Part shown: positions 37,143 through 53,027 of the stretch, one piece after another
Layout: every line of letters starts with the position of its first letter
Numbering within the stretch: position 1 is the stretch's first letter
DNA from: Octopus bimaculoides
Taxonomy: Eukaryota
Assembly: GCF_001194135.2 (NCBI RefSeq)
Contig: NC_068998.1
Span: forward strand, 48,854,227-48,912,868
Reading direction: 5' to 3'
DNA length: 58,642 nt
Position numbers and translations under genes: made by a program
Notes under the pieces: generated by a model
Database searches by the model: none
What the model saw: the letters and a program-made list of their open reading frames with translations, nothing else
What the model was told of the DNA's origin: nothing

Positions 37143-37980
37143 GTGAGTAGCGGATCATTAACTGCATGGTAGTCACGGCTCGGGGGAGATAAATTGTGAA
37201 TTGAGGCATGTTTATAATTGATGAAATCATGAAATGATGAAATGAGATGGCGTACAAAGAGGAAGTTTTTTTTCTACATTTAAACATTAGTTGGGTCGCT
37301 GTAAGTGTTGTAAAGATCCTGGTATAGCTGAAGATGAAGTGAACTGAGTTATGTTTATATCTTGTGAGATAATGTATGAGGAAATATGAGGTTGTTTGCC
37401 AGGACGACTTCACCATTGAAAAACTTTCATAAACGGAGTACCGTAGTGGCCACTCGCTACAACACAAAACAACGTAATACGAGCTGCCTCATACGAAGTT
37501 CATGCTACATAATTCCAGATGCCAAATACAAACTCTAAAGGGAAAATTATATCAGTGACATTATATTAGAATATAAAAAAGTTCGGCATAAAACTTCATA
37601 ATGCAAAATTTCAGTAAATAAAATTTCGGGATAAAAAATTTCAAAATACAAGTCTTCGGAATATAAAATTTCTGTCTACTGAATTCCACTCAAAAGTGTT
37701 TGGTGGCCCCGAATGCATGGCTGAAAGTACTTCACTCGCTGAAGGTTTCTCGCAGTAAAGTCAAACCCGAAATCGGGTAGTTGCAAAGCGAAAACAACGA
37801 CGACAGCAACAATTATTGTTTAATTTGATAATGTTTTTGTCATTAATTAACCTGTGCTTCACTGTCTAATTTACCAATGTTTAAACATTTTTATGAAGAA
37901 GAATGCGACCATTGATCAACCACGTTACGTCGCAATTATTCCAGTTTACCAGTTGACCATGTTTTGTTTTACAATTTCAG

Positions 37981-38887
37981 AAGCCATCATCTGTTGCTAT
38001 CCCAGACGTCATCGCCATACTTCACGGAGCAACCACTAATACCGAGCGTTACCGACTATACATCCCCGTTTTCGAAGGATTATCATTCATCGGAGTTTTC
38101 CACTTTGTCCCCTCTTCCATCTCCGTCACAACCATCCCCAAAACCATCATCATCAACACGGTCATCTACATTTTTTCCCTCGCATTCATCTACATCATCT
38201 GCTAGAGGATGTGCAACTTCCACATCGTCGACAGCCACAACATATTCGAGGTCCACAACAGTTGATAAAAAACCGGAAGCAGAACCAAAGCAAAGTCGAT
38301 TTCTTCCAGTCATATCCAAAGAAAAAAGAGCCGAAATGAATATTGTAATATTTAACCAAATCGCTGAGATCACTCAGTATTTGTATCTTTGTGCTGCTGC
38401 AGCAGTGTCTCGAGAGAAGGTTCGCTCACTTCAAATCACTCATATCATAAACTGCACCCTCGATGTTCCGAACTTCAAAGGTGAAAATGTTGCATGCGTC
38501 AATATCCAGGTAGATGATTCTTCTCGGGCACACCTCGGCATTTACTTTGATCGTTGTGCTGACATGATTCGTCAAGCCAGTTTGAAAAATGGTAAAGTTC
38601 TGGTCCATTGTGTGGCTGGAGTTAGTCGGTCGGCTAGTCTTTGTATTGCCTATTTAATGAAGTACGAAAGGATGAGCTTACTGCAAGCTTACAAATTTGT
38701 AAAGAGGAAACGATATGTGATTCATCCGAACGTTGGATTTTGGCAGCAACTGATTGAGTATGAAAAACGGATCTTCGGTCGAGCAACTGTGAAAATGGTT
38801 TATTCTAATGTGGGTATGGTTCCGGAAGTCTACATTGATGAAGAGAATGAATTACTTCGACTTCAACAAAATTCACGCCATCGCTAA
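37981..38887 (+). CDS. DUSP14-like: Atypical dual-specificity phosphatase (DUSP14/18/21-like), main coding exon
   Basis: Acceptor GTTTTGTTTTACAATTTCAG|. Catalytic loop VHCVAGVSRSASLCIAYLMK (Cys codon 38609-38611), N-terminal IAEITQYLYL and ITHIINCT, IHPNVGFWQQLIEYE, and the C-terminal TVKMVYSNVGMVPEVY typical of DUSP14/18/21. No rhodanese domain; S/T/P-rich N-terminal extension. Confidence 0.93.
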
Positions 38888-45105: not shown

Positions 45106-45123
45106 TTAATTCTTCTCTGGTGT
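45106..45123 (-). CDS. Bcl-2-like gene, probable terminal coding exon (TPEKN*)
   Basis: Strongest downstream acceptor (TTTTCTTTTGTTCTTTCAG|ACACCAG); phase 0 gives TPEKN then TAA. Weaker alternative acceptors exist near 45659 and 45597. Confidence 0.55.
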   Translation of the reverse strand, partial: TPEKN

Positions 45124-46212
45124 CTGAAAGAACAAAAGAAAATGTGGTGTTTATATGTTAATTACATATTAAGCATGGCTATGTCAACCGGAAACATGAC
45201 ATCTGTATACTAAAAGGAATAGTCTACAAAATGGTTACTATAAAGTTTACAATGAAGTTTATAAACTGTGTAGAAAGTAACATACAAAAACACTACAAAA
45301 ATGTTAAGAAAACATCTATAATTACAATAGGGAGTCTAAAGAAGAATGATGCACATGCGTATACAAGAAATTGCTACCTTATCTCCAAATTGAACACAAA
45401 AGGTGAGATAATAACATGAAAAGCGTGAAGAAAAATGACACATTACAATCTATAAGTGAAAATATAACGAAATCTACAGCAATATTACAGAAGTTATAGC
45501 AAAAAGGGCAAACATAGAAAAAATGCAGGGAAAACCAGCTAAGATAGACCAAAATAACACTATGGAATGGTCAAGAAAAGGATCTACACAGGAATCTCTA
45601 AAAGAAACGGTCTTCAAAAAGGAACACAGGAACACAATGGAGTCAACAGAATAGAATAGCTTGAGATGTGCAAAAAAAAAAAAAAAATGGAAATAGTTCA
45701 CAACATTATGTCAAAGGTATCTAGAAAATAATTTAAATTTTACAAAAATATTGTATAGTAAAAAATGCAAAGACAGGAAATGAAAACCTACCCAGTCACC
45801 ATTTGAAGTGAAATTATCATGAATGTATGTAACAGCATGCTGTTCAACTATATTGTCACTACTGAATGAAGGGTAAGCAGATGTATATCGTCGACAGATT
45901 TCAAATACTGCAACTAGCTGGAAGAAGAAAAGACAATATATAAATATGTGTTACATGAGGTCTCTCCATACACTTTCTGCAACTTTGCGTAGGCTTCTGG
46001 GCAGGTGTCGCCATAACAACAATCACCCGATACGCACCTTCCTTCCAAGCACTGCTGTAAATAGCAGAAGTGAGCTAGAACGGTAAAACTTAGTGCGCAT
46101 ACAGAGCAGAGTTCAAGGAGCTTCACTCTGAATGGTTTAGCTTCGTTACTATAGCAACAGTTCAAATACTTATTGATCAGACCTCGTATATGTATATGTA
46201 CATCTATCTACT

Positions 46213-46308
<96 letters not shown>

Positions 46309-49300
46309 TATCCTGATAATTTATCCTGATCACACTATTTATAGCATTATCACGCGTTTGAGAAATAAATTTATTTTTGTATCTTACAATACATCTCAAC
46401 GCTTCTAAAAAAGAACAAACTTTGTTTGTTTACTTTCATCGTAAAGTTGACTTTAACGTTAGCGTCTTATGAAGCTACATTTATAAGTTCTAAAATTGCA
46501 GAAGAATTCGTTGCTGGGCAGTTTAGTTTAATGGTAAAACACTTGACATGTAATCACAGAGATGTGAGTTCGAGTCTCATGGCTGGCCGGCAACGTATTT
46601 TTCTGCATTATATGGATAATTTATCCTGATCACGCGTTTGAGAAATAAATTTATTTCTGTATCTTACATATATAAATAGATATATATATATATATAAGAA
46701 GCCTGTATTTCCTCACACTGTTCCACCAGACCTATGCTGTTTGTGTATGTACATGTGTACGTGTTTATGTATGTGAGTGTGAGACAGATTGAGGGGAAGA
46801 GAAAGTGAAAGCGAGCGAATCATTTTAAAGTGTGTTAATTTAGAGATTATATAGACCATTTAAACAAAACAAAACGAAAAAAAAAAAAAAACGATTCTGG
46901 ATAAAGAATCAGAAGTATTTTGTTTTTGGATTTGGTTTGCAAGAAGTATAATATCTTATTTATACACTAAGCGTCTAACAGTTCTAAAGGAGGATAGGAA
47001 CAGCAGCCTTTAATTTTGAATTTTAAAAAATTAATTTAAAATGGGACATAAGTGTAGATGTTATAAATTTTTCGTGACGTAATATGAAAAATGAAAAAGG
47101 AGAATAGATTGCTGTTACCTGTAGACTTCGTTCTGTAATGTTTGATAACAGTTTCTTGGCAGCCTTTTTGAAATTATCATATTCAATCAATCTAGATTCG
47201 TATTCACGAACAACGCTGTTGGTATTGTCACGATATTTTCCGTCCAATTCGTCACCCATCCGCATTAAGTTGCGTCCAACTCCCTGACAGTTTGATACAT
47301 TTAGTTTAGCTGATTTAGGAAAACAATATATTAGTAAGAATGTATGTATGTATGTATGTCTGTAAGTATGCATGCATGCAAATAGGTATACACATATATA
47401 CAGAAAATAAAATGTACTAGTTTTTGATTTTTTAAAATTTATTAATTCATTCCTAAATATGTAATTTCAGTCAAATTGCTGCAAAATGCAACATTATACG
47501 TTCCAAATATTGGTTATTAATGTATAGAGCATTGACTCTGTTAATTTATGTGTCTATAAAAGGTGCAGTTCTCCATTTGTTTTATACAAGACTTCACAGT
47601 CCACTGGCCGTGCTGTTTTAAATTATAACAAGGAAAACTGGATATATAAAAAAAGAAGTTAATTATAAAAGATACCCTCAAAAACTCTGTATTGTGTTCT
47701 TTAGGATATTTGTCTTTGTATCGACTCAGTAGAACCAACAAGAAGCGTAACTAACCGGATTTTGCTGTTGGGGAGTCAGCTTCCCATTCATCGTAAGTTG
47801 AAGTAAGTGCATTACGTAACTTTATATATTCCCGTAGAAGTTCTGGGGTGTTTCCGACAATATAGGCTGGCTGAAGTATTCTGGAATAGATATGTTCAAA
47901 AATATCATTCTATATCTGTATGTATGTGTACACATACATACATACACACATACATACACACATACATACCCTGAAATCTTACCCAAAGAAATTGCAAGAC
48001 TCTACCGTAACATAACATCAGAGGAGAGGATGAATGCATTCCAGCAGAAGACCATGCATGGATACGTTAACAGAAAGCTCCAGGGTGATAACAACATTGA
48101 CAACCAGAGAAGTCTATCGTGGACAAACAATCGGGTCACCAACTCTCACTTTGAAGGGTATGCCTTTGCTATTCAAGAACAAGAAATAGCAACCAAATTC
48201 CTAATAAACAAACGGGACAGAGAGGCGGGCAAAGCGCCACAATGTAATAACCGATGCAGACTCTGTGGAATCAGTATCGAAGATATCACACACATCATCA
48301 GCAGCTGTCCAAAAATGTCATCACGGTATTACCTACCTATGAGACATGATGTTGTGGCCAAGACACTGTACAATGAAATCCGCCGACAGGATAACCCCGG
48401 GGCTAAGTAGATGAAGACCCATATGAGGTAGAGGCCATTATCACTCACAATATAAAAGAGTATTGGTGGAATGTCCGAATAAAAACCTCAATAAAATGCA
48501 GACATAATAGACCGGATATAGTAATCTGGGACAGAGGAGAAACAGTGTACAGTAGTAGAAATCAGCTGTCCTGCGGATGTCAACATCACGCTAAAGCTTA
48601 GAGAAAAAGAGAACAACTACGCCGAGCTACTGAGAAATTTGCAGATACTCCACCCAGACTACAAGTTCAGATTCATACCCGTGATTGTTGAGGCATTGGG
48701 ATATGTAACGAACTGCCTCAACAAAAACCTGGAAAAATTAGGGTTCTCAAAACCTGAAAGAAAAAGGCTGATTAGAAGAATACAGATTCAAACCGTCAAT
48801 GGAACTGTAAAGATATGTAAAACTTTCCAAAAGTTTAGCACATAAATACATATGCATGCATCTAGACATGAAAATATATACATAAAAACGCATCCATNNN
48901 NNNNNNNNNNNNNNNNNNNNNNNNNNNNNNNNNNNNNNNNNNNNNNNNNNNNNNNNNNNNNNNNNNNNNNNNNNNNNNNNNNNNNNNNNNNNNNNNNNNN
49001 NNNNNNNNNNNNNNNNNNNNNNNNNNNNNNNNNNNNNNNNNNNNNNNNNNNNNNNNNNNNNNNNNNNNNNNNNNNNNNNNNNNNNNNNNNNNNNNNNNNN
49101 NNNNNNNNNNNNNNNNNNNNNNNNNNNNNNNNNNNNNNNNNNNNNNNNNNNNNNNNNNNNNNNNNNNNNNNNNNNNNNNNNNNNNNNNNNNNNNNNNNNN
49201 NNNNNNNNNNNNNNNNNNNNNNNNNNNNNNNNNNNNNNNNNNNNNNNNNNNNNNNNNNNNNNNNNNNNNNNNNNNNNNNNNNNNNNNNNNNNNNNNNNNN

Positions 49301-52300
49301 NNNNNNNNNNNNNNNNNNNNNNNNNNNNNNNNNNNNNNNNNNNNNNNNNNNNNNNNNNNNNNNNNNNNNNNNNNNNNNNNNNNNNNNNNNNNNNNNNNNN
49401 NNNNNNNNNNNNNNNNNNNNNNNNNNNNNNNNNNNNNNNNNNNNNNNNNNNNNNNNNNNNNNNNNNNNNNNNNNNNNNNNNNNNNNNNNNNNNNNNNNNN
49501 NNNNNNNNNNNNNNNNNNNNNNNNNNNNNNNNNNNNNNNNNNNNNNNNNNNNNNNNNNNNNNNNNNNNNNNNNNNNNNNNNNNNNNNNNNNNNNNNNTAT
49601 ATATATATATATATATATAATTTTTGAAATGGTCAAATTTGTACATTGAGGTGTGGTCTGTACTTTTGTATGAACAAGTTTTCCTTGTTTAGGCATTCTT
49701 GTACTGAGATTGAATCTTTGTATTGGTATAATGGGAAGATATGAAAATTCGGTGTTTTATTACTTGCTCATCTGTTGATATGTCCGCTCAGTGCTATCTG
49801 CCTGTATTGAGGGAAATGAATCTGTTGTTTATGCAGTGTGACTCTTATTTGAGAATGTTTGTCCCTGCTGGAATGTGAATTCCGAGCCTTCAGTTAGGTA
49901 TGGGTATGCACCACAATTAGGTCGTCTGCATTTTTTAACTGTTAGTATCGTTTGTATTGAGTAGAGTTTTGCATTTGTTAGGAGTCTTTTGAGTGATTTG
50001 TCTTGTCTTTTGCATTTAAGGAGTTTGTGTGTATTTAGGATGCTGTTCATTTTCGGGTCTTGATTGAGCAGAGGGAGATTTTGTATAATTGTGCTGTATG
50101 CTTCGTAACTGAATACCAACCACGTTCAAATACATTTCACAGAAGAATGGAGACAAATACCACTAACGCTATAGCAACTTTCGCTGAAGTTACCACAACA
50201 ATAGCCACTGACACATCTACTGCTGTTGCTACTACTATTGAGTAAGAGTTAGAAGAAAATGAAACACCATTGTGATGTGGCATTTTTATACAAAAAAGCT
50301 TGTGATTTTTCAAAACTGGTTTTGTGTTAATCTAATTTATTGCAATTTGTTTTAACTTTTTGTTCATCATGTCTAAGCTGTTTTTTTCCCCACACGATTC
50401 AAATTAGTAACTTATTTAGAAAAGAATATATTATCTAAATGATTTCTCATGTTCCTTTGATAAAGTTCTCAATGTATTTCCCTTTGTGAATATGAAATTT
50501 CTTTACCTTATATCCACCCATCCATCCATCCTATTTATCCCCAGGAAGCTGGACTGCTTCCTATTGGCCTTGACACATTACCTGTGTCCTTATATTTGCG
50601 ATGGGGAGACAAGCACCCCCATCCATCCTTGTGTGCGTTCAGGGACATGTTTCTGAGTCATTGCTCGTCATCAGCCTGAAGTAGCAACACCAGCTGGCTG
50701 AAGATGCTTGTCAAACCCCCGCAAATATAAGGACACAGGAAATGTGTCAAGGCCGACAGGAAGTGGTCCAGCTTCCTAGGGATAAATAGCAGCAGTATGA
50801 TTCCCTTATTGGGATTGTCACATTAAGTTGACAGTTGGCACTCCGTCGCTTACGACGTTCAGGGTTCCAGTTGATCCGATCAACAGAACAGCCTGCTCAG
50901 GAAATTTACGTGCAAGTGGCTGAGCACTCCACAGACACGTGTACCTTTAACCTAGTTCTCGGAGATATTCAGCGTGACACAGTGTGACAAGGCTGACCCT
51001 TTTGAATTACAGGCACAACAGAAACAGGAAGTAAGAGTGAGAGAAAGTTGTGGTGAAAGCGTACAGCAGGGTTCGCCACCATCCCCTGCCGGAGCCTCGT
51101 GGAGCTTTAGGTGTTTTCGCTCAATAAACACTCACAGCGCCTGGTCTGGGAATCGAAACCGCGATCGTATGACCGCGAGTCCGCTGCCCTAACCACTGGG
51201 CCATTGCGCCGCCACTAAGTTGACAGTATACAACTGCTTTAAAATATTAAGAATTTATAGACAATAATAAGAAATACATATAACCTACATATTAAGAGAC
51301 AAGGAATTAAAATTAGGGGCATGGAAATGATAAAGGTAACCCGGAAAGAGGGGGTAATAGGCAAGGAAGTAGTGAGGGTAGTTAAAGGTATTCAGACCAA
51401 AGAGATTTTATAAGTTTATAATGTTACTGGTGTTATTGCATGTATGATTTTATAGTTCCTAGGGGGTTTAGGGTTTAGTCAAAGGGAGACTTACTTACAT
51501 AAAGTCACGACAAATATACAGAATATGACCATTTAGGTGGAACATCATAGAAAGGAAAATAATGTAATCACCAAAATAGGATGAAGTCAGACCAGCTACG
51601 CAGGGGTTATCATGGGATAGTATTATATATAGCACAGCACATACCACAACACATAGCATATAACATATATGTAATGCAATATAATTGATCATATAACAAA
51701 ATATCACATGATTTTTTTTATATTTGATACTGGAGGATAAGTTTATAATGAATACGACACCAAATTTAATTTCCACTATGAAAATTCAAGTATGATAACT
51801 ATAATTGCCAGTTCCGAAAATACTTGAATGTACGGGTTTTGCGGGTAATACTGGACTGACTCGGTGCTTCAACTTAAGTACCTAATTCAACTGAATCTCA
51901 GTTATTTACATCCATCCATACGTATATATATATATGCATACATACATATATACATGAATACATACATATATACATACCTACATATATATATNNNNNNNNN
52001 NNNNNNNNNNNNNNNNNNNNNNNNNNNNNNNNNNNNNNNNNNNNNNNNNNNNNNNNNNNNNNNNNNNNNNNNNNNNNNNNNNNNNNNNNNNNNNNNNNNN
52101 NNNNNNNNNNNNNNNNNNNNNNNNNNNNNNNNNNNNNNNNNNNNNNNNNNNNNNNNNNNNNNNNNNNNNNNNNNNNNNNNNNNNNNNNNNNNNNNNNNNN
52201 NNNNNNNNNNNNNNNNNNNNNNNNNNNNNNNNNNNNNNNNNNNNNNNNNNNNNNNNNNNNNNNNNNNNNNNNNNNNNNNNNNNNNNNNNNNNNNNNNNNN

Positions 52301-53027
52301 NNNNNNNNNNNNNNNNNNNNNNNNNNNNNNNNNNNNNNNNNNNNNNNNNNNNNNNNNNNNNNNNNNNNNNNNNNNNNNNNNNNNNNNNNNNNNNNNNNNN
52401 NNNNNNNNNNNNNNNNNNNNNNNNNNNNNNNNNNNNNNNNNNNNNNNNNNNNNNNNNNNNNNNNNNNNNNNNNNNNNNNNNNNNNNNNNNNNNNNNNNNN
52501 NNNNNNNNNNNNNNNNNNNNNNNNNNNNNNNNNNNNNNNNNNNNNNNNNNNNNNNNNNNNNNNNNNNNNNNNNNNNNNNNNNNNNNNNNNNNNNNNNNNN
52601 NNNNNNNNNNNNNNNNNNNNNNNNNNNNNNNNNNNNNNNNNNNNNNNNNNNNNNNNNNNNNNNNNNNNNNNNNNNNNNNNNNNNNNNNNNNNNNNNNNNN
52701 NNNNNNNNNNNNNNNNNNNNNNNNNNNNNNNNNNNNNNNNNNNNNNNNNNNNNNNNNNNNNNNNNNNNNNNNNNNNNNNNNNNNNNNNNNNNNNNNNNNN
52801 NNNNNNNNNNNNNNNNNNNNNNNNNNNNNNNNNNNNNNNNNNNNNNNNNNNNNNNNNNNNNNNGCTAAAGTCTAAGTAGAAACAGTTATCAAAGAAGGCA
52901 CTGGAGTAGAAATGATTAACGGATTAGCTCTGAGGGTAATGCATTCCATGCACACGAACATAGCCGCAGATAAATGATTAAAATCGACAAAAGAATAGAG
53001 AAATTGATTTATTTACCCATCATCCAT
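45106..53027 (-). CDS. Spliced gene model (5 coding exons, 156 aa): Bcl-2-family protein with Bid/Bfk(BCL2L15)/Bcl-G-like architecture
   Basis: Exons 53027-53017, 47880-47756, 47309-47119, 45917-45792 and 45123-45106 join through GT-AG introns with matching phases (2,1,0,0). Translation: MDDGILQPAYIVGNTPELLREYIKLRNALTSTYDEWEADSPTAKSAKLNVSNCQGVGRNLMRMGDELDGKYRDNTNSVVREYESRLIEYDNFKKAAKKLLSNITERSLQLVAVFEICRRYTSAYPSFSSDNIVEQHAVTYIHDNFTSNGDWTPEKN*. BH3 is VGRNLMRMGDELD; BH2-like motif is FTSNGDW. Confidence 0.8.
45792..45917 (-). CDS. Bcl-2-like gene, exon 4 (degenerate BH1/helix 5 to BH2)
   Basis: Acceptor TTTTCTTCTTCCAG|, donor TGG|GTAGGT. 126 nt, phase 0/0; encodes LVAVFEICRRY...YIHDNFTSNGDW. 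The intron falls right after the BH2 Trp, as in BCL2/BCL-xL. Confidence 0.85.
45955..46165 (-). mobile_element. Mariner-derived relic in intron 3, next to the exon-4 acceptor
   Basis: Minus strand reads GDTCPEAYAKLQKVYGE, resembling the first mariner HTH helix. Confidence 0.45.
46517..46588 (+). tRNA. tRNA-Thr(TGT)-like sequence, probably a pseudogene or repeat-borne
   Basis: Cloverleaf: D-stem GTTT/AAAC, anticodon loop CATGTAA (TGT at 46549-46551), T-arm GTGAG-TTCGAGT-CTCAT, and a T5 run at 46598-46602. Defects: A at U33, imperfect anticodon stem, one acceptor-stem mismatch. Confidence 0.6.
47119..47309 (-). CDS. Bcl-2-like gene, exon 3 (BH3 exon)
   Basis: Branch-like TTACTAAT, acceptor TTTTCCTAAATCAG|, donor CAG|GTAACA. 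191 nt open; encodes GVGRNLMRMGDELDGKY and FKKAAKKLL (helix 4-like). Confidence 0.88.
47756..47880 (-). CDS. Bcl-2-like gene, exon 2 (ILQPAY...DEWEADSPTAKS)
   Basis: Acceptor TATTCCAG|, donor G|GTTAGT. 125 nt, open, phase 2 to phase 1; joins exon 3 as GCT (Ala). Confidence 0.75.
47969..48897 (+). mobile_element. 5'-truncated R4/Dong-type non-LTR retrotransposon (restriction-like endonuclease), pseudogenised
   Basis: CCHC knuckle CRLCGISIEDITHIISSC, RHD motif, RLE motif HNRPDIVIWD...VVEISCP, and FIPVIVEALG. Stop at 48408-48410 plus frameshifts. Begins directly after a (TACA)n/(CA)n tract; lies antisense inside an intron of the Bcl-2-like gene. Confidence 0.87.
49640..50119 (-). mobile_element. 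Penelope-like element relic (linker plus GIY-YIG region)
   Basis: KSLKRLLTNAK, KKCRRPNCGAYPYLTEGSEF, then RVTLHKQQI...KENLFIQKYRPHLN; internal deletion. Confidence 0.75.
50531..50789. repeat. 70-bp inverted repeats (50531-50600 and 50720-50789) enclosing a hammerhead
   Basis: Left arm CTATTTATCCCCAGGAAGCTGG...TTATATTTGCG is the reverse complement of the right arm with about 6 mismatches. Confidence 0.9.
50638..50680 (-). ncRNA. Minimal type I hammerhead ribozyme
   Basis: Minus strand TTCAGG-CTGATGA-C-GAG caatga CTC-A-GAAAC-AT-GTC-CCTGAA: 6-bp stem I, intact core, palindromic stem III ACATGT, GUC cleavage triplet. Confidence 0.72.
50836..51215 (-). mobile_element. Full-length SINE family C with a 12-bp TSD
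   Basis: TAAGTTGACAGT at 50824-50835 and 51216-51227; intact A and B boxes. Confidence 0.92.

What the first reader, a model, noticed from the sequence alone, without database searches (positions are those of the whole stretch)
47756..47800. Candidate caspase switch DEWEAD/S about 17 residues before the BH3
Seen: residues 34-40 (DEWEADS) lie in an acidic, probably unstructured loop between an N-terminal amphipathic helix (ELLREYIKLRNAL) and the BH3. Established: BID (LQTD/G) and BFK (DEVD/S) are activated by caspase cleavage at the equivalent position, and WExD is the preferred motif of group I (caspase-1-like) enzymes. Inference: cleavage after Asp39 would release a truncated BH3 effector, possibly downstream of an inflammatory-type caspase. 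Caveat: Pro at P2' may slow cleavage.
Basis: inference. Interest (0 to 1): 0.72.

Follow-up and report, generated by a model that had tools for sequence, protein, structure and literature searches.

The report
Possible caspase site in octopus BAK-like protein
The motif is real and lies in a flexible loop just before the death-signalling (BH3) helix of a small, fast-evolving, octopus-only relative of the cell-death protein BAK, so it is a reasonable but unproven protease "on-switch", and nothing supports a link to inflammatory-type caspases.

Summary
Window 47792..47772 (minus strand) encodes DEWEADS, residues 34-40 of Octopus bimaculoides LOC106877837, a 156-aa protein from 5 exons.

The protein is not BID or BFK by sequence. 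A profile of its only relatives, all from Octopus, matches human BAK (E 3e-6; hhalign 92%). It keeps an alpha1 helix, a canonical BH3 (LMRMGDEL) and a degenerate BH2 (NGDW) followed by the family's phase-0 intron. It lacks the NWGR motif of BH1, 12 residues at alpha5-alpha6, and the membrane anchor.

An AlphaFold model built on a BAK-rich alignment gives a Bcl-2 fold. Residues 32-50 are disordered, so the motif is in the alpha1-alpha2 loop, where BID, BFK and, from general knowledge, Bcl-2 and Bcl-xL are cut.

W-E-x-D-S-P is kept in the O. sinensis orthologue (WEVDSP). It is absent from the neighbouring paralogue, which has DIID/G instead.

The gene evolves almost neutrally (dN/dS 0.93). The O. 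sinensis copy has a BH3 Asp-to-Asn change and a frameshift. Asp39 aligns with the invariant Asp57 of tetrapod BAK, which is not a caspase site.

Inflammatory caspases are reported only in vertebrates. Verdict: a plausible, untested BID/BFK-like switch, about 0.4 that it is cleaved in vivo.

The parts
47772..47792 (-). The motif DEWEADS (residues 34-40). For a cut after Asp39 the subsites are P4 Trp36, P3 Glu37, P2 Ala38, P1 Asp39 (GAC, 47777..47775), P1' Ser40, followed by Pro41.
   Evidence: Translation. Lies inside the pLDDT<50 segment 32-50 of the model.
47756..47880 (-). Exon 2, codons 4(part)-46(part). Encodes alpha1 (NTPELLREYIKLRNAL, BH4-like, aligned to BAK DTEEVFRSYVFYRHQ) and the first half of the alpha1-alpha2 loop.
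   Evidence: Acceptor ttccag|, donor G|gttagt. The assembled CDS equals P0001. Alignment to BAK.
53017..53027 (-). Coding part of exon 1 (ATG GAT GAT GG = MDD + 2 nt of Gly4).
47119..47309 (-). Exon 3, codons 46(part)-109. Encodes the rest of the loop, the BH3/alpha2, alpha3, alpha4 and the position of the lost NWGR (ITERSLQ).
   Evidence: Alignment to BAK.
47233..47280 (-). BH3 core VGRNLMRMGDELDGKY (V56-Y71), with the canonical L-x-x-x-G-D-E pattern.
   Evidence: Sequence. Aligned to BAK VGRQLAIIGDDINRRY.
45792..45917 (-). Exon 4, codons 110-151. Encodes alpha5-like LVAVFEICRRY, then the BH2-like YIHDNFTSNGDW (45827..45792), ending exactly after the Trp codon (phase-0 intron).
   Evidence: The same position and phase as the GGW| intron of mammalian BAK1.
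45106..45123 (-). Exon 5 coding part: TPEKN plus stop. There is no C-terminal transmembrane helix.
   Evidence: The CDS span of 7922 bp equals the gene length in the chromosome-level assembly.

Best explanation
What the gene is. [quoted passage not shown] The protein keeps an alpha1 (BH4-like) helix, a canonical BH3 and a vestigial BH2. It has lost the NWGR motif of BH1, part of the alpha5-alpha6 hairpin and the membrane anchor. In architecture it is therefore a soluble, BID/BFK-like globular protein that carries a BH3.

Proposed mechanism. W36-E37-A38-D39/S40-P41 lies in the disordered alpha1-alpha2 loop. The most likely function is an Asp-directed (caspase) cleavage site. Cutting after Asp39 would sever the covalent link between alpha1 and the BH3 helix. 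That would favour release of alpha1 and exposure of the BH3, so that the 40-156 fragment can engage other Bcl-2 proteins, as happens for BID and BFK. From general knowledge, cleavage of Bcl-2 and Bcl-xL in the same loop also turns them pro-death.

Which enzyme. It would be an octopus apoptotic caspase (caspase-2/-Y, -8-like or an effector), not a caspase-1 orthologue.

Shown versus inferred. Shown here: the gene model, BAK homology, loop location, disorder in the model, and retention in one orthologue. Inferred: cleavage itself, the enzyme, and the functional consequence.
For: - Gene model and identity.
- BAK homology: family profile against PDB, human BAK E 2.9e-6; hhalign against 16 BAKs, probability 92.3%, E 5.5e-7.
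- Family hallmarks: BH3 and BH2 alignment; shared phase-0 intron after the BH2 Trp.
- Structure: AlphaFold pLDDT 80.5, pTM 0.77, with residues 32-50 disordered. The top 50 Foldseek hits in PDB are all Bcl-2 family.
- Motif quality: the strict aromatic-E-x-D-small motif occurs in the loop in only 0.3-0.5% of shuffles.
- Orthologue: it keeps DEWEvDSP, 7 of 8 residues, against 64% overall identity, and Ser40 is kept through a TCC/AGC codon switch.
- Local constraint: dN/dS is lower in alpha1 and the loop (0.66-0.67) than in the C-terminal part (1.0-1.6).
- Paralogues: they carry their own DxxD/G (DIID/G) just upstream of the BH3.
- Precedents: BFK DEVD41/S42 and BID loop cleavage (PMC8814693); BID IEAD75/S (PMC2193181).
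Against: - No cleavage data exist.
- The motif class was chosen after seeing the sequence. A broadly defined caspase-like site appears in this loop in 20-24% of shuffles. The same protein has DELD/G inside the BH3 helix, which shows how easily such patterns match.
- The site is not conserved in the paralogues.
- Asp39 aligns with BAK Asp57 (D-P-E), at the same 21-residue distance from the BH3 Leu, so it may be an inherited loop residue with another role or none.
- Whole-gene dN/dS is 0.93. The O. sinensis copy has BH3 Asp changed to Asn and a 1-nt deletion in exon 4. Retention of the motif there may simply reflect too little time to diverge.
- Trp at P4 does not fit the caspase-3/7 pattern, and no Trp-preferring caspase is known in molluscs.
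- The AlphaFold model leans on a BAK-rich alignment, so fold and loop boundaries are partly inherited from BAK.
- Expression was not verified. Only genome records carry the protein.
Confidence: 0.4

Rival explanations
1. The motif has no specific function. It is ordinary sequence in a fast-drifting, acidic, disordered loop, and Asp39-(Ser)-Pro is a leftover of the ancestral BAK loop motif x-D-P-E. Its resemblance to a WEHD-type caspase site is coincidence.
For: - A broad caspase-like motif is expected in the loop in 20-24% of shuffles.
- Asp39 aligns with Asp57 of BAK, invariant in the 16 tetrapod sequences aligned, at identical spacing to the BH3.
- The paralogues lack the motif.
- dN/dS is 0.93.
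- With 64% identity, 7 of 8 identical residues has a probability of about 0.15 (my calculation).
Against: - The strict motif is rare by chance, 0.3-0.5%.
- The block is one of the best conserved stretches of the N-terminal half between orthologues, and Ser40 is kept through a two-nucleotide codon change.
- The location coincides with the loop that caspases cut in BID and BFK and, from general knowledge, in Bcl-2 and Bcl-xL.
Confidence: 0.35
2. The gene is losing function: a decaying duplicate of BAK in the Octopus lineage. No element in it, the motif included, would then be under selection.
For: - dN/dS is 0.93 overall and 1.0-1.6 in the C-terminal half.
- The O. sinensis orthologue has a 1-nt deletion that frameshifts the BH2-like segment and an Asp-to-Asn change at the key BH3 position.
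- No Pfam model reaches threshold.
- Only genome-derived records carry the protein, with no transcript contig on record.
- No relatives were found outside Octopus.
Against: - The O. bimaculoides reading frame is intact over five exons with canonical splice sites.
- The BH3 is canonical.
- The out-of-frame O. sinensis segment still encodes YIRDTFTSGGNW, so the frameshift may be a long-read assembly error.
- The paralogue is intact in two species.
- A dN/dS near 1 can also come from mixed purifying and positive selection, as in immune genes.
Confidence: 0.15
3. The conserved block D-E-W-E-x-D-S-P is a different short linear motif. It could be a proline-directed or acidophilic phosphorylation site (Ser40-Pro41; Ser31/Thr32 with acidic +3 residues) or an acidic-Trp docking motif. 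Either could regulate the protein's stability, localisation or partner binding rather than proteolysis.
For: - Ser40-Pro41 is conserved between orthologues, with a Ser codon switch.
- The loop is disordered.
- From general knowledge, alpha1-alpha2 loops of Bcl-2 family proteins are phosphorylation hubs, and BID cleavage is gated by phosphorylation next to the caspase site.
Against: - My manual comparison with recalled consensus patterns found no fit: the kinesin light-chain W-acidic pattern, the LC3-interaction pattern W-x-x-[LIV] and the D-S-G-x-x-S degron all fail.
- There is no kinase or partner evidence.
- The motif is absent from the paralogues.
- This reading can coexist with the caspase reading rather than replace it.
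Confidence: 0.1

Closest known systems
BAK (BAK1, Bcl-2 homologous antagonist/killer)
   Same: - It is the only family detected by sequence: profile against PDB E 3e-6 and hhalign 92% over alpha1-alpha4.
- The alpha1 helix, loop length, BH3 (VGRxL..GD) and alpha4 (Y-x-x-F-x-K-x-A) all align.
- The BH2 Trp is followed by the same phase-0 intron.
- Asp39 aligns with BAK Asp57.
   Different: - NWGR of BH1 is replaced by ERSLQ.
- There is a 12-residue deletion at alpha5-alpha6.
- The BH2 is degenerate, with a 4-residue insert.
- There is no transmembrane anchor, and the protein is 156 aa against 211 aa.
- The other three intron positions and phases differ.
- BAK's loop motif D-P-E is not a caspase site, and BAK is not known to me to be activated by caspase cleavage.
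BFK / BCL2L15
   Same: - The architecture is the same: about 160 aa, BH3 plus BH2 only, no NWGR groove, no membrane anchor, ending a few residues after the BH2 Trp.
- An acidic x-E-x-D/S site lies in the alpha1'-alpha2 loop, about 16-21 residues before the BH3 Leu (DEVD41/S42 against WEAD39/S40).
[quoted passage not shown]
   Different: - No detectable sequence relationship beyond the BH3 (BLASTP nothing; hhalign 1.1%).
- P4 is Trp, not Asp.
- Not among the top 50 structural matches.
BID
   Same: - A globular BH3 protein that is inactive until cut in the loop before the BH3.
- P3-P1' EAD/S is identical to BID's granzyme B site IEAD75/S.
- The proposed mechanism, alpha1 release after cleavage, is the tBID mechanism.
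   Different: - No significant similarity (hhalign 0.45%; the Pfam BID model did not hit).
- A visual resemblance of the C-terminal third to BID alpha6-alpha8 is not statistically supported.
- BID is reported to appear first in cartilaginous fishes (PMC8998228).
Caspase cleavage of Bcl-2 (Asp34) and Bcl-xL (Asp61/76) in the alpha1-alpha2 loop
   Same: The same loop of the same fold is cut. Removal of the BH4/alpha1 helix converts the protein to a pro-death form. This comes from general knowledge and was not checked here.
   Different: Those proteins are anti-apoptotic, anchored to membranes and have full BH1 and BH2 motifs.

Membership tests
Bcl-2 family (Bcl-2 fold) | BH3 motif L-x-x-x-[GA]-D-[ED] on an amphipathic helix | tested here: met
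   LMRMGDEL at L60-L67, aligned to BAK LAIIGDDI. It lies within helix 49-85 of the model.
Bcl-2 family (Bcl-2 fold) | Significant sequence or profile similarity to an accepted member | tested here: met
   Family profile against PDB: human BAK E 2.9e-6. hhalign against 16 BAKs: probability 92.3%, E 5.5e-7. This covers residues 10-101 only.
Bcl-2 family (Bcl-2 fold) | Pfam Bcl-2 domain (PF00452) above the gathering score | tested here: not met
   No hit for P0001. The best in the family is P0005 at 13.3 bits against a 31.4 cut-off.
Bcl-2 family (Bcl-2 fold) | BH1 with the NWGR motif | tested here: not met
   The aligned segment reads ITERSLQ; Trp, Gly and Arg are all absent.
Bcl-2 family (Bcl-2 fold) | BH2 ending in G-G-W, with a phase-0 intron directly after the Trp codon | tested here: met
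   YIHDNFTSNGDW|gtaggt, phase 0. Warthog BAK1 has QRGGW| at phase 0. The motif is degenerate (G-D-W, with a 4-residue insert).
Bcl-2 family (Bcl-2 fold) | Helical-bundle fold | tested here: inconclusive
   The model has pLDDT 80.5 and all top 50 PDB matches are Bcl-2 family, at TM 0.5-0.6. However, 29 of the 32 alignment rows are BAK, and the single-sequence model was poor (pLDDT 41.7).
BAK-type pore-forming effector | C-terminal transmembrane anchor and a full alpha5-alpha6 hairpin | tested here: not met
   The protein ends 5 residues after the BH2 Trp, and 12 residues are missing at alpha5-alpha6.
BID | Sequence membership (Pfam BID or profile similarity) | tested here: not met
   No Pfam hit. 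hhalign probability 0.45%. The C-terminal profile finds nothing in PDB.
BFK / BCL2L15 | Sequence similarity to BCL2L15 | tested here: not met
   BLASTP E 32. hhalign probability 1.1%, BH3 only. The human BFK sequence was verified against PDB 7ccl.
BFK / BCL2L15 | Architecture: BH3 plus BH2, no BH1 groove, no anchor, about 160 aa | tested here: met
   compared with the description in PMC8814693.
Caspase-activated Bcl-2 family proteins (BID, BFK) | Actual cleavage after the loop Asp, and gain of activity in the truncated form | not testable with these tools
   Needs biochemistry. Only the sequence motif and loop disorder could be shown.
Group I (caspase-1-like, WEHD-type) substrate | Aromatic P4, Glu P3, Asp P1, small P1' | tested here: met
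   WEAD/S in O. bimaculoides and WEVD/S in O. sinensis.
Group I (caspase-1-like, WEHD-type) substrate | A group I / inflammatory caspase exists in the organism | not tested
   No octopus caspase was examined here. The literature reports inflammatory caspases as vertebrate-restricted, with caspase-2 and caspase-Y in molluscs (PMC10959488), and no PYCARD in lophotrochozoans (PMC11463336).

The most novel reading that the evidence does not exclude
The Octopus lineage independently made a BID/BFK-like, caspase-activated BH3 effector by duplicating BAK and stripping it of its groove and membrane anchor. On this reading the W-E-x-D/S-P loop site couples an upstream octopus caspase to the mitochondrial pathway. 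The near-neutral to accelerated evolution of the gene pair would then reflect an arms race, for example with pathogens. This would be convergent evolution of the extrinsic-to-intrinsic link in a protostome, and a living model of how BID-type proteins can arise from a multi-BH ancestor.
Probability: 0.15. Interest if true: 0.75.

Novelty: new variant of a known kind. Interest (0 to 1): 0.45.

Why it matters
Globular BH3 proteins that are switched on by cleavage (BID, BFK) are described only from vertebrates, and their origin is unclear. One survey places the first BID in cartilaginous fishes (PMC8998228).

An uncharacterised, octopus-only BAK derivative with the same stripped-down architecture and a well-placed Asp site gives a testable case of how such a switch could evolve from a pore-forming effector. 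It would also help show how protostome caspases might feed into the mitochondrial pathway, which is poorly understood in molluscs.

If the site is not cleaved, the result is still a useful annotation. LOC106877837, LOC115219866 and LOC115219865 are divergent BAK-like Bcl-2 family genes that standard domain models miss.

Tried and rejected
- **Single-sequence searches gave nothing useful.** Pfam had no hit, PDB phmmer had no hit, and the single-sequence AlphaFold model was poor (pLDDT 41.7).
- **BFK or BID membership is rejected**. The C-terminal third looks BID-like by eye (CRRYTSAYPSFSSD against AKKVASHTPSLLRD). A profile of that third alone finds no Bcl-2 protein in PDB, so I do not claim the resemblance.
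- **Wider orthologue search found only Octopus.** A full HMMER scan of 1.84 billion representatives found only two Octopus clusters. The profile word-index search found only the same proteins. A metagenome scan found none. Conservation 'across cephalopods' therefore could not be tested beyond O. sinensis.
- **The octopus canonical BAK was not recovered.** The last homology search, seeded with human BAK, listed only tetrapod BAKs in its top 120.
- **No O. bimaculoides paralogue was found** in the window or in the 10-kb flanks of the chromosome-level locus.
- **Other short-motif readings did not fit** my recalled consensus patterns: the kinesin W-acidic motif, the LC3-interaction motif and the beta-TrCP degron.
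- **Intron conservation with BAK1 is limited.** Only the BH2 intron is shared; the other three differ in position and phase.
- **Intron-flank identity as a neutral yardstick was unreliable.** The upstream flanks align at only about 50%, because of repeats and insertions.
Full report
**1. What is at the coordinates**

The window is a gapped draft of an animal genome, with 18 N runs and 37.5% G+C. The finding lies on the minus strand. Window 47792..47772 translates to DEWEADS and 47798..47757 to TYDEWEADSPTAKS.

The stretch is the 3' end of an exon with a canonical acceptor (ttccag|) and donor (G|gttagt). A search with the translated exons returned one protein, the 156-aa 'uncharacterized protein LOC106877837' of Octopus bimaculoides.

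I mapped all five coding exons:
- 53027..53017
- 47880..47756
- 47309..47119
- 45917..45792
- 45123..45106

Their concatenation translates exactly to that protein. The 7922-bp span equals the gene length in the chromosome-level assembly.

**2. What the protein is**

Single-sequence methods see nothing: no Pfam hit, no PDB hit, and a poor single-sequence AlphaFold model.

A full HMMER scan of 1.84 billion representative proteins found only two relatives:
- O. sinensis LOC115219866, 64% identical, the orthologue.
- O. sinensis LOC115219865, 43% identical, with an O. vulgaris counterpart.

The two O. sinensis genes are head-to-head neighbours about 26 kb apart, so this is a local duplicate pair.

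A profile of the four Octopus sequences matches human BAK in the PDB at E 2.9e-6 over residues 10-100. hhalign against 16 tetrapod BAKs gives 92.3% probability and E 5.5e-7. Comparison with human BFK (sequence verified against 7ccl) and with human BID (sequence recalled from memory, not verified) gives nothing beyond the BH3.

In the alignment with BAK:
- alpha1 NTPELLREYIKLRN pairs with DTEEVFRSYVFYRH.
- The BH3 VGRNLMRMGDELDGKY pairs with VGRQLAIIGDDINRRY.
- alpha4 YDNFKKAAKKLL pairs with YEYFTKIATSLF.
- NWGR of BH1 is replaced by ERSLQ.
- Twelve residues are missing at alpha5-alpha6.
- The BH2 WIAQRGGW is represented by YIHDNFTSNGDW.
- The protein stops five residues later, with no membrane anchor.

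The intron directly after the BH2 Trp codon (phase 0) is shared with mammalian BAK1. The other three introns differ in position and phase.

With a 32-row alignment (3 Octopus, 29 BAK), AlphaFold gives pLDDT 80.5 and pTM 0.77. All of its top 50 PDB neighbours are Bcl-2 family proteins (BOK, Bcl-xL, BAK, Mcl-1) at TM 0.5-0.6. This model leans on BAK rows and is supportive rather than independent.

My conclusion is that this is a lineage-specific, BAK-derived Bcl-2 family protein with the architecture of BFK or BID (BH3 plus vestigial BH2, no groove motif, no anchor) but not their ancestry.

**3. Is the motif in a loop, and is it conserved**

In the model, residues 32-50 have pLDDT below 50, between helices 15-32 and 49-85. 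By homology this is the BAK alpha1-alpha2 loop.

The O. sinensis orthologue has DDEWEVDSP. W-E-x-D-S-P is kept, and Ser40 is kept through a TCC/AGC codon switch.

The paralogues read ALSAGS at this place and so lack the motif. They do carry DIID/G six residues before the BH3 Leu.

Asp39 aligns with Asp57 of BAK, which is invariant in the 16 tetrapod BAKs. Both lie 21 residues before the BH3 Leu, inside a conserved D-P-E motif. That motif cannot be a caspase site, because P1' is Pro.

**4. How much weight the conservation carries**

Between O. bimaculoides and O. sinensis, dS is 0.243 and dN is 0.227, giving dN/dS 0.93. By region, dN/dS is 0.66-0.67 in alpha1 and the loop and 1.0-1.6 further on.

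The O. sinensis copy also has Asn in place of the key BH3 Asp (LARMGNEF). It has a 1-nt deletion in exon 4, after which the BH2-like YIRDTFTSGGNW is still readable in another frame. This is either a long-read assembly error or recent decay.

With 64% overall identity, 7 of 8 identical residues in the motif block has a probability of about 0.15 by my calculation. Conservation is suggestive, not decisive.

**5. Chance**

Shuffling shows that the strict motif [WYF]-E-x-D-[GSAN] falls in the loop in 0.3-0.5% of trials. A broadly defined caspase-like site does so in 20-24%. The protein also contains DELD/G inside its BH3 helix, which matches the caspase-3/7 pattern I wrote from the ELM resource and is surely not a switch.

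**6. Comparison with what is known**

- BFK is reported to be cut at DEVD41/S42 in its alpha1'-alpha2 loop, and truncated BFK is the active form. BID works the same way (PMC8814693).
- BID also has IEAD75/S, described as an excellent granzyme B site (PMC2193181). The P3-P1' context EAD/S is therefore proven to be cleavable.
- From general knowledge, Bcl-2 and Bcl-xL are also cut in this loop, and the caspase-1 site of pro-IL-1beta is YVHD/AP. Pro at P2' is therefore not an obstacle.
- The link to an inflammatory-type caspase is unsupported. Inflammatory caspases are reported as vertebrate-restricted, while molluscs have caspase-2 and a lophotrochozoan caspase-Y (PMC10959488). PYCARD was not found in lophotrochozoans (PMC11463336).

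**7. Verdict**

The site is well placed and chemically plausible in a protein whose architecture invites a BID/BFK-type activation. The protein itself is an unrecognised BAK derivative, which is the more solid result of this work.

My estimates:
- About 0.4 that the site is cut by a caspase in vivo.
- About 0.2-0.25 for the full claim of cleavage plus activation.
- About 0.35 that the motif is functionless loop sequence.
- About 0.15 that the gene is decaying.
- About 0.1 that the motif has a different function.

Wider cephalopod conservation could not be tested, because no other relatives exist in the searchable collections.

Noticed in passing
L003:64302-64420 (O. sinensis orthologue, exon 4) and L003:58486-58676 (exon 3): The O. 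sinensis orthologue has a 1-nt deletion that frameshifts the BH2-like segment; YIRDTFTSGGNW is still readable in another frame. It also has a 6-nt deletion and an Asp-to-Asn change at the key BH3 position (LARMGNEF). This is either an assembly indel or early pseudogenisation.
   Followed up: partly
L002 and L003 (O. sinensis CM016873.1, about 67.57-67.67 Mb); L004 (O. vulgaris): The family is a head-to-head gene pair about 26 kb apart in O. sinensis. The paralogue (165 aa) has the same exon boundaries, an intact BH3 (LRTIADEL) and its own DIID/G just before the BH3. No O. bimaculoides copy of the paralogue was found in the window or in the 10-kb flanks.
   Followed up: partly
window 45792-47880 compared with L003: The orthologue pair evolves at dN/dS 0.93 (dS 0.24, dN 0.23). 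The ratio is above 1 in the C-terminal part, which is unusually fast for a Bcl-2 family gene.
   Followed up: partly
window 47775-47777 (Asp39) compared with alignment A5: Asp39 aligns with Asp57 of BAK, in the conserved loop motif D-P-E-(M/I); Asp57 is invariant in the 16 tetrapod BAKs of alignment A4. Both Asp residues lie exactly 21 residues before the BH3 Leu. I know of no function for that BAK motif.
   Followed up: no
window 47892-48410 (+): A retroelement fragment (172-aa ORF with a weak zf-RVT match, E 0.0012, below the Pfam threshold) and an (ACATACAT)n microsatellite lie in intron 1, only 12 bp from the exon 2 acceptor, on the opposite strand. The corresponding O. sinensis flank does not align, so this may be a lineage-specific insertion.
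   Followed up: partly
window 37964-38887 (+): An intact single-exon ORF of 307 aa encodes a dual-specificity phosphatase (Pfam DSPc, E 2.4e-39, active site HCVAGVSRS). It is the neighbouring gene also called in the chromosome-level assembly.
   Followed up: partly
window 47235-47250 (residues 65-69, DELDG): The BH3 helix itself contains DELD/G, which matches the caspase-3/7 pattern I wrote from the ELM resource. It is a reminder that pattern matches alone mean little here.
   Followed up: yes
window 45792-45917 (residues 110-151): By eye the C-terminal third resembles BID alpha6-alpha8 (CRRYTSAYPSFSSD against AKKVASHTPSLLRD; NIVEQHAVTYIH against NFINQNLRTYVR). The resemblance is not statistically supported (hhalign 0.45%; the C-terminal profile finds nothing in PDB).
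   Followed up: yes
L001:1-27922 (minus strand of the locus, plus strand of the window): The chromosome-level annotation calls another gene with a 152-aa product on the opposite strand, spanning the whole locus. LOC106877837 may therefore be nested in an intron of a larger gene.
   Followed up: no
window, 18 N runs (for example 48898-49597, 51992-52863): Where the flanking translations could be read, most of the larger assembly gaps are flanked by AT/TA, CA/TG or GA/TC dinucleotide microsatellites. One gap lies inside intron 1 of the gene, so intron content there is unknown.
   Followed up: no
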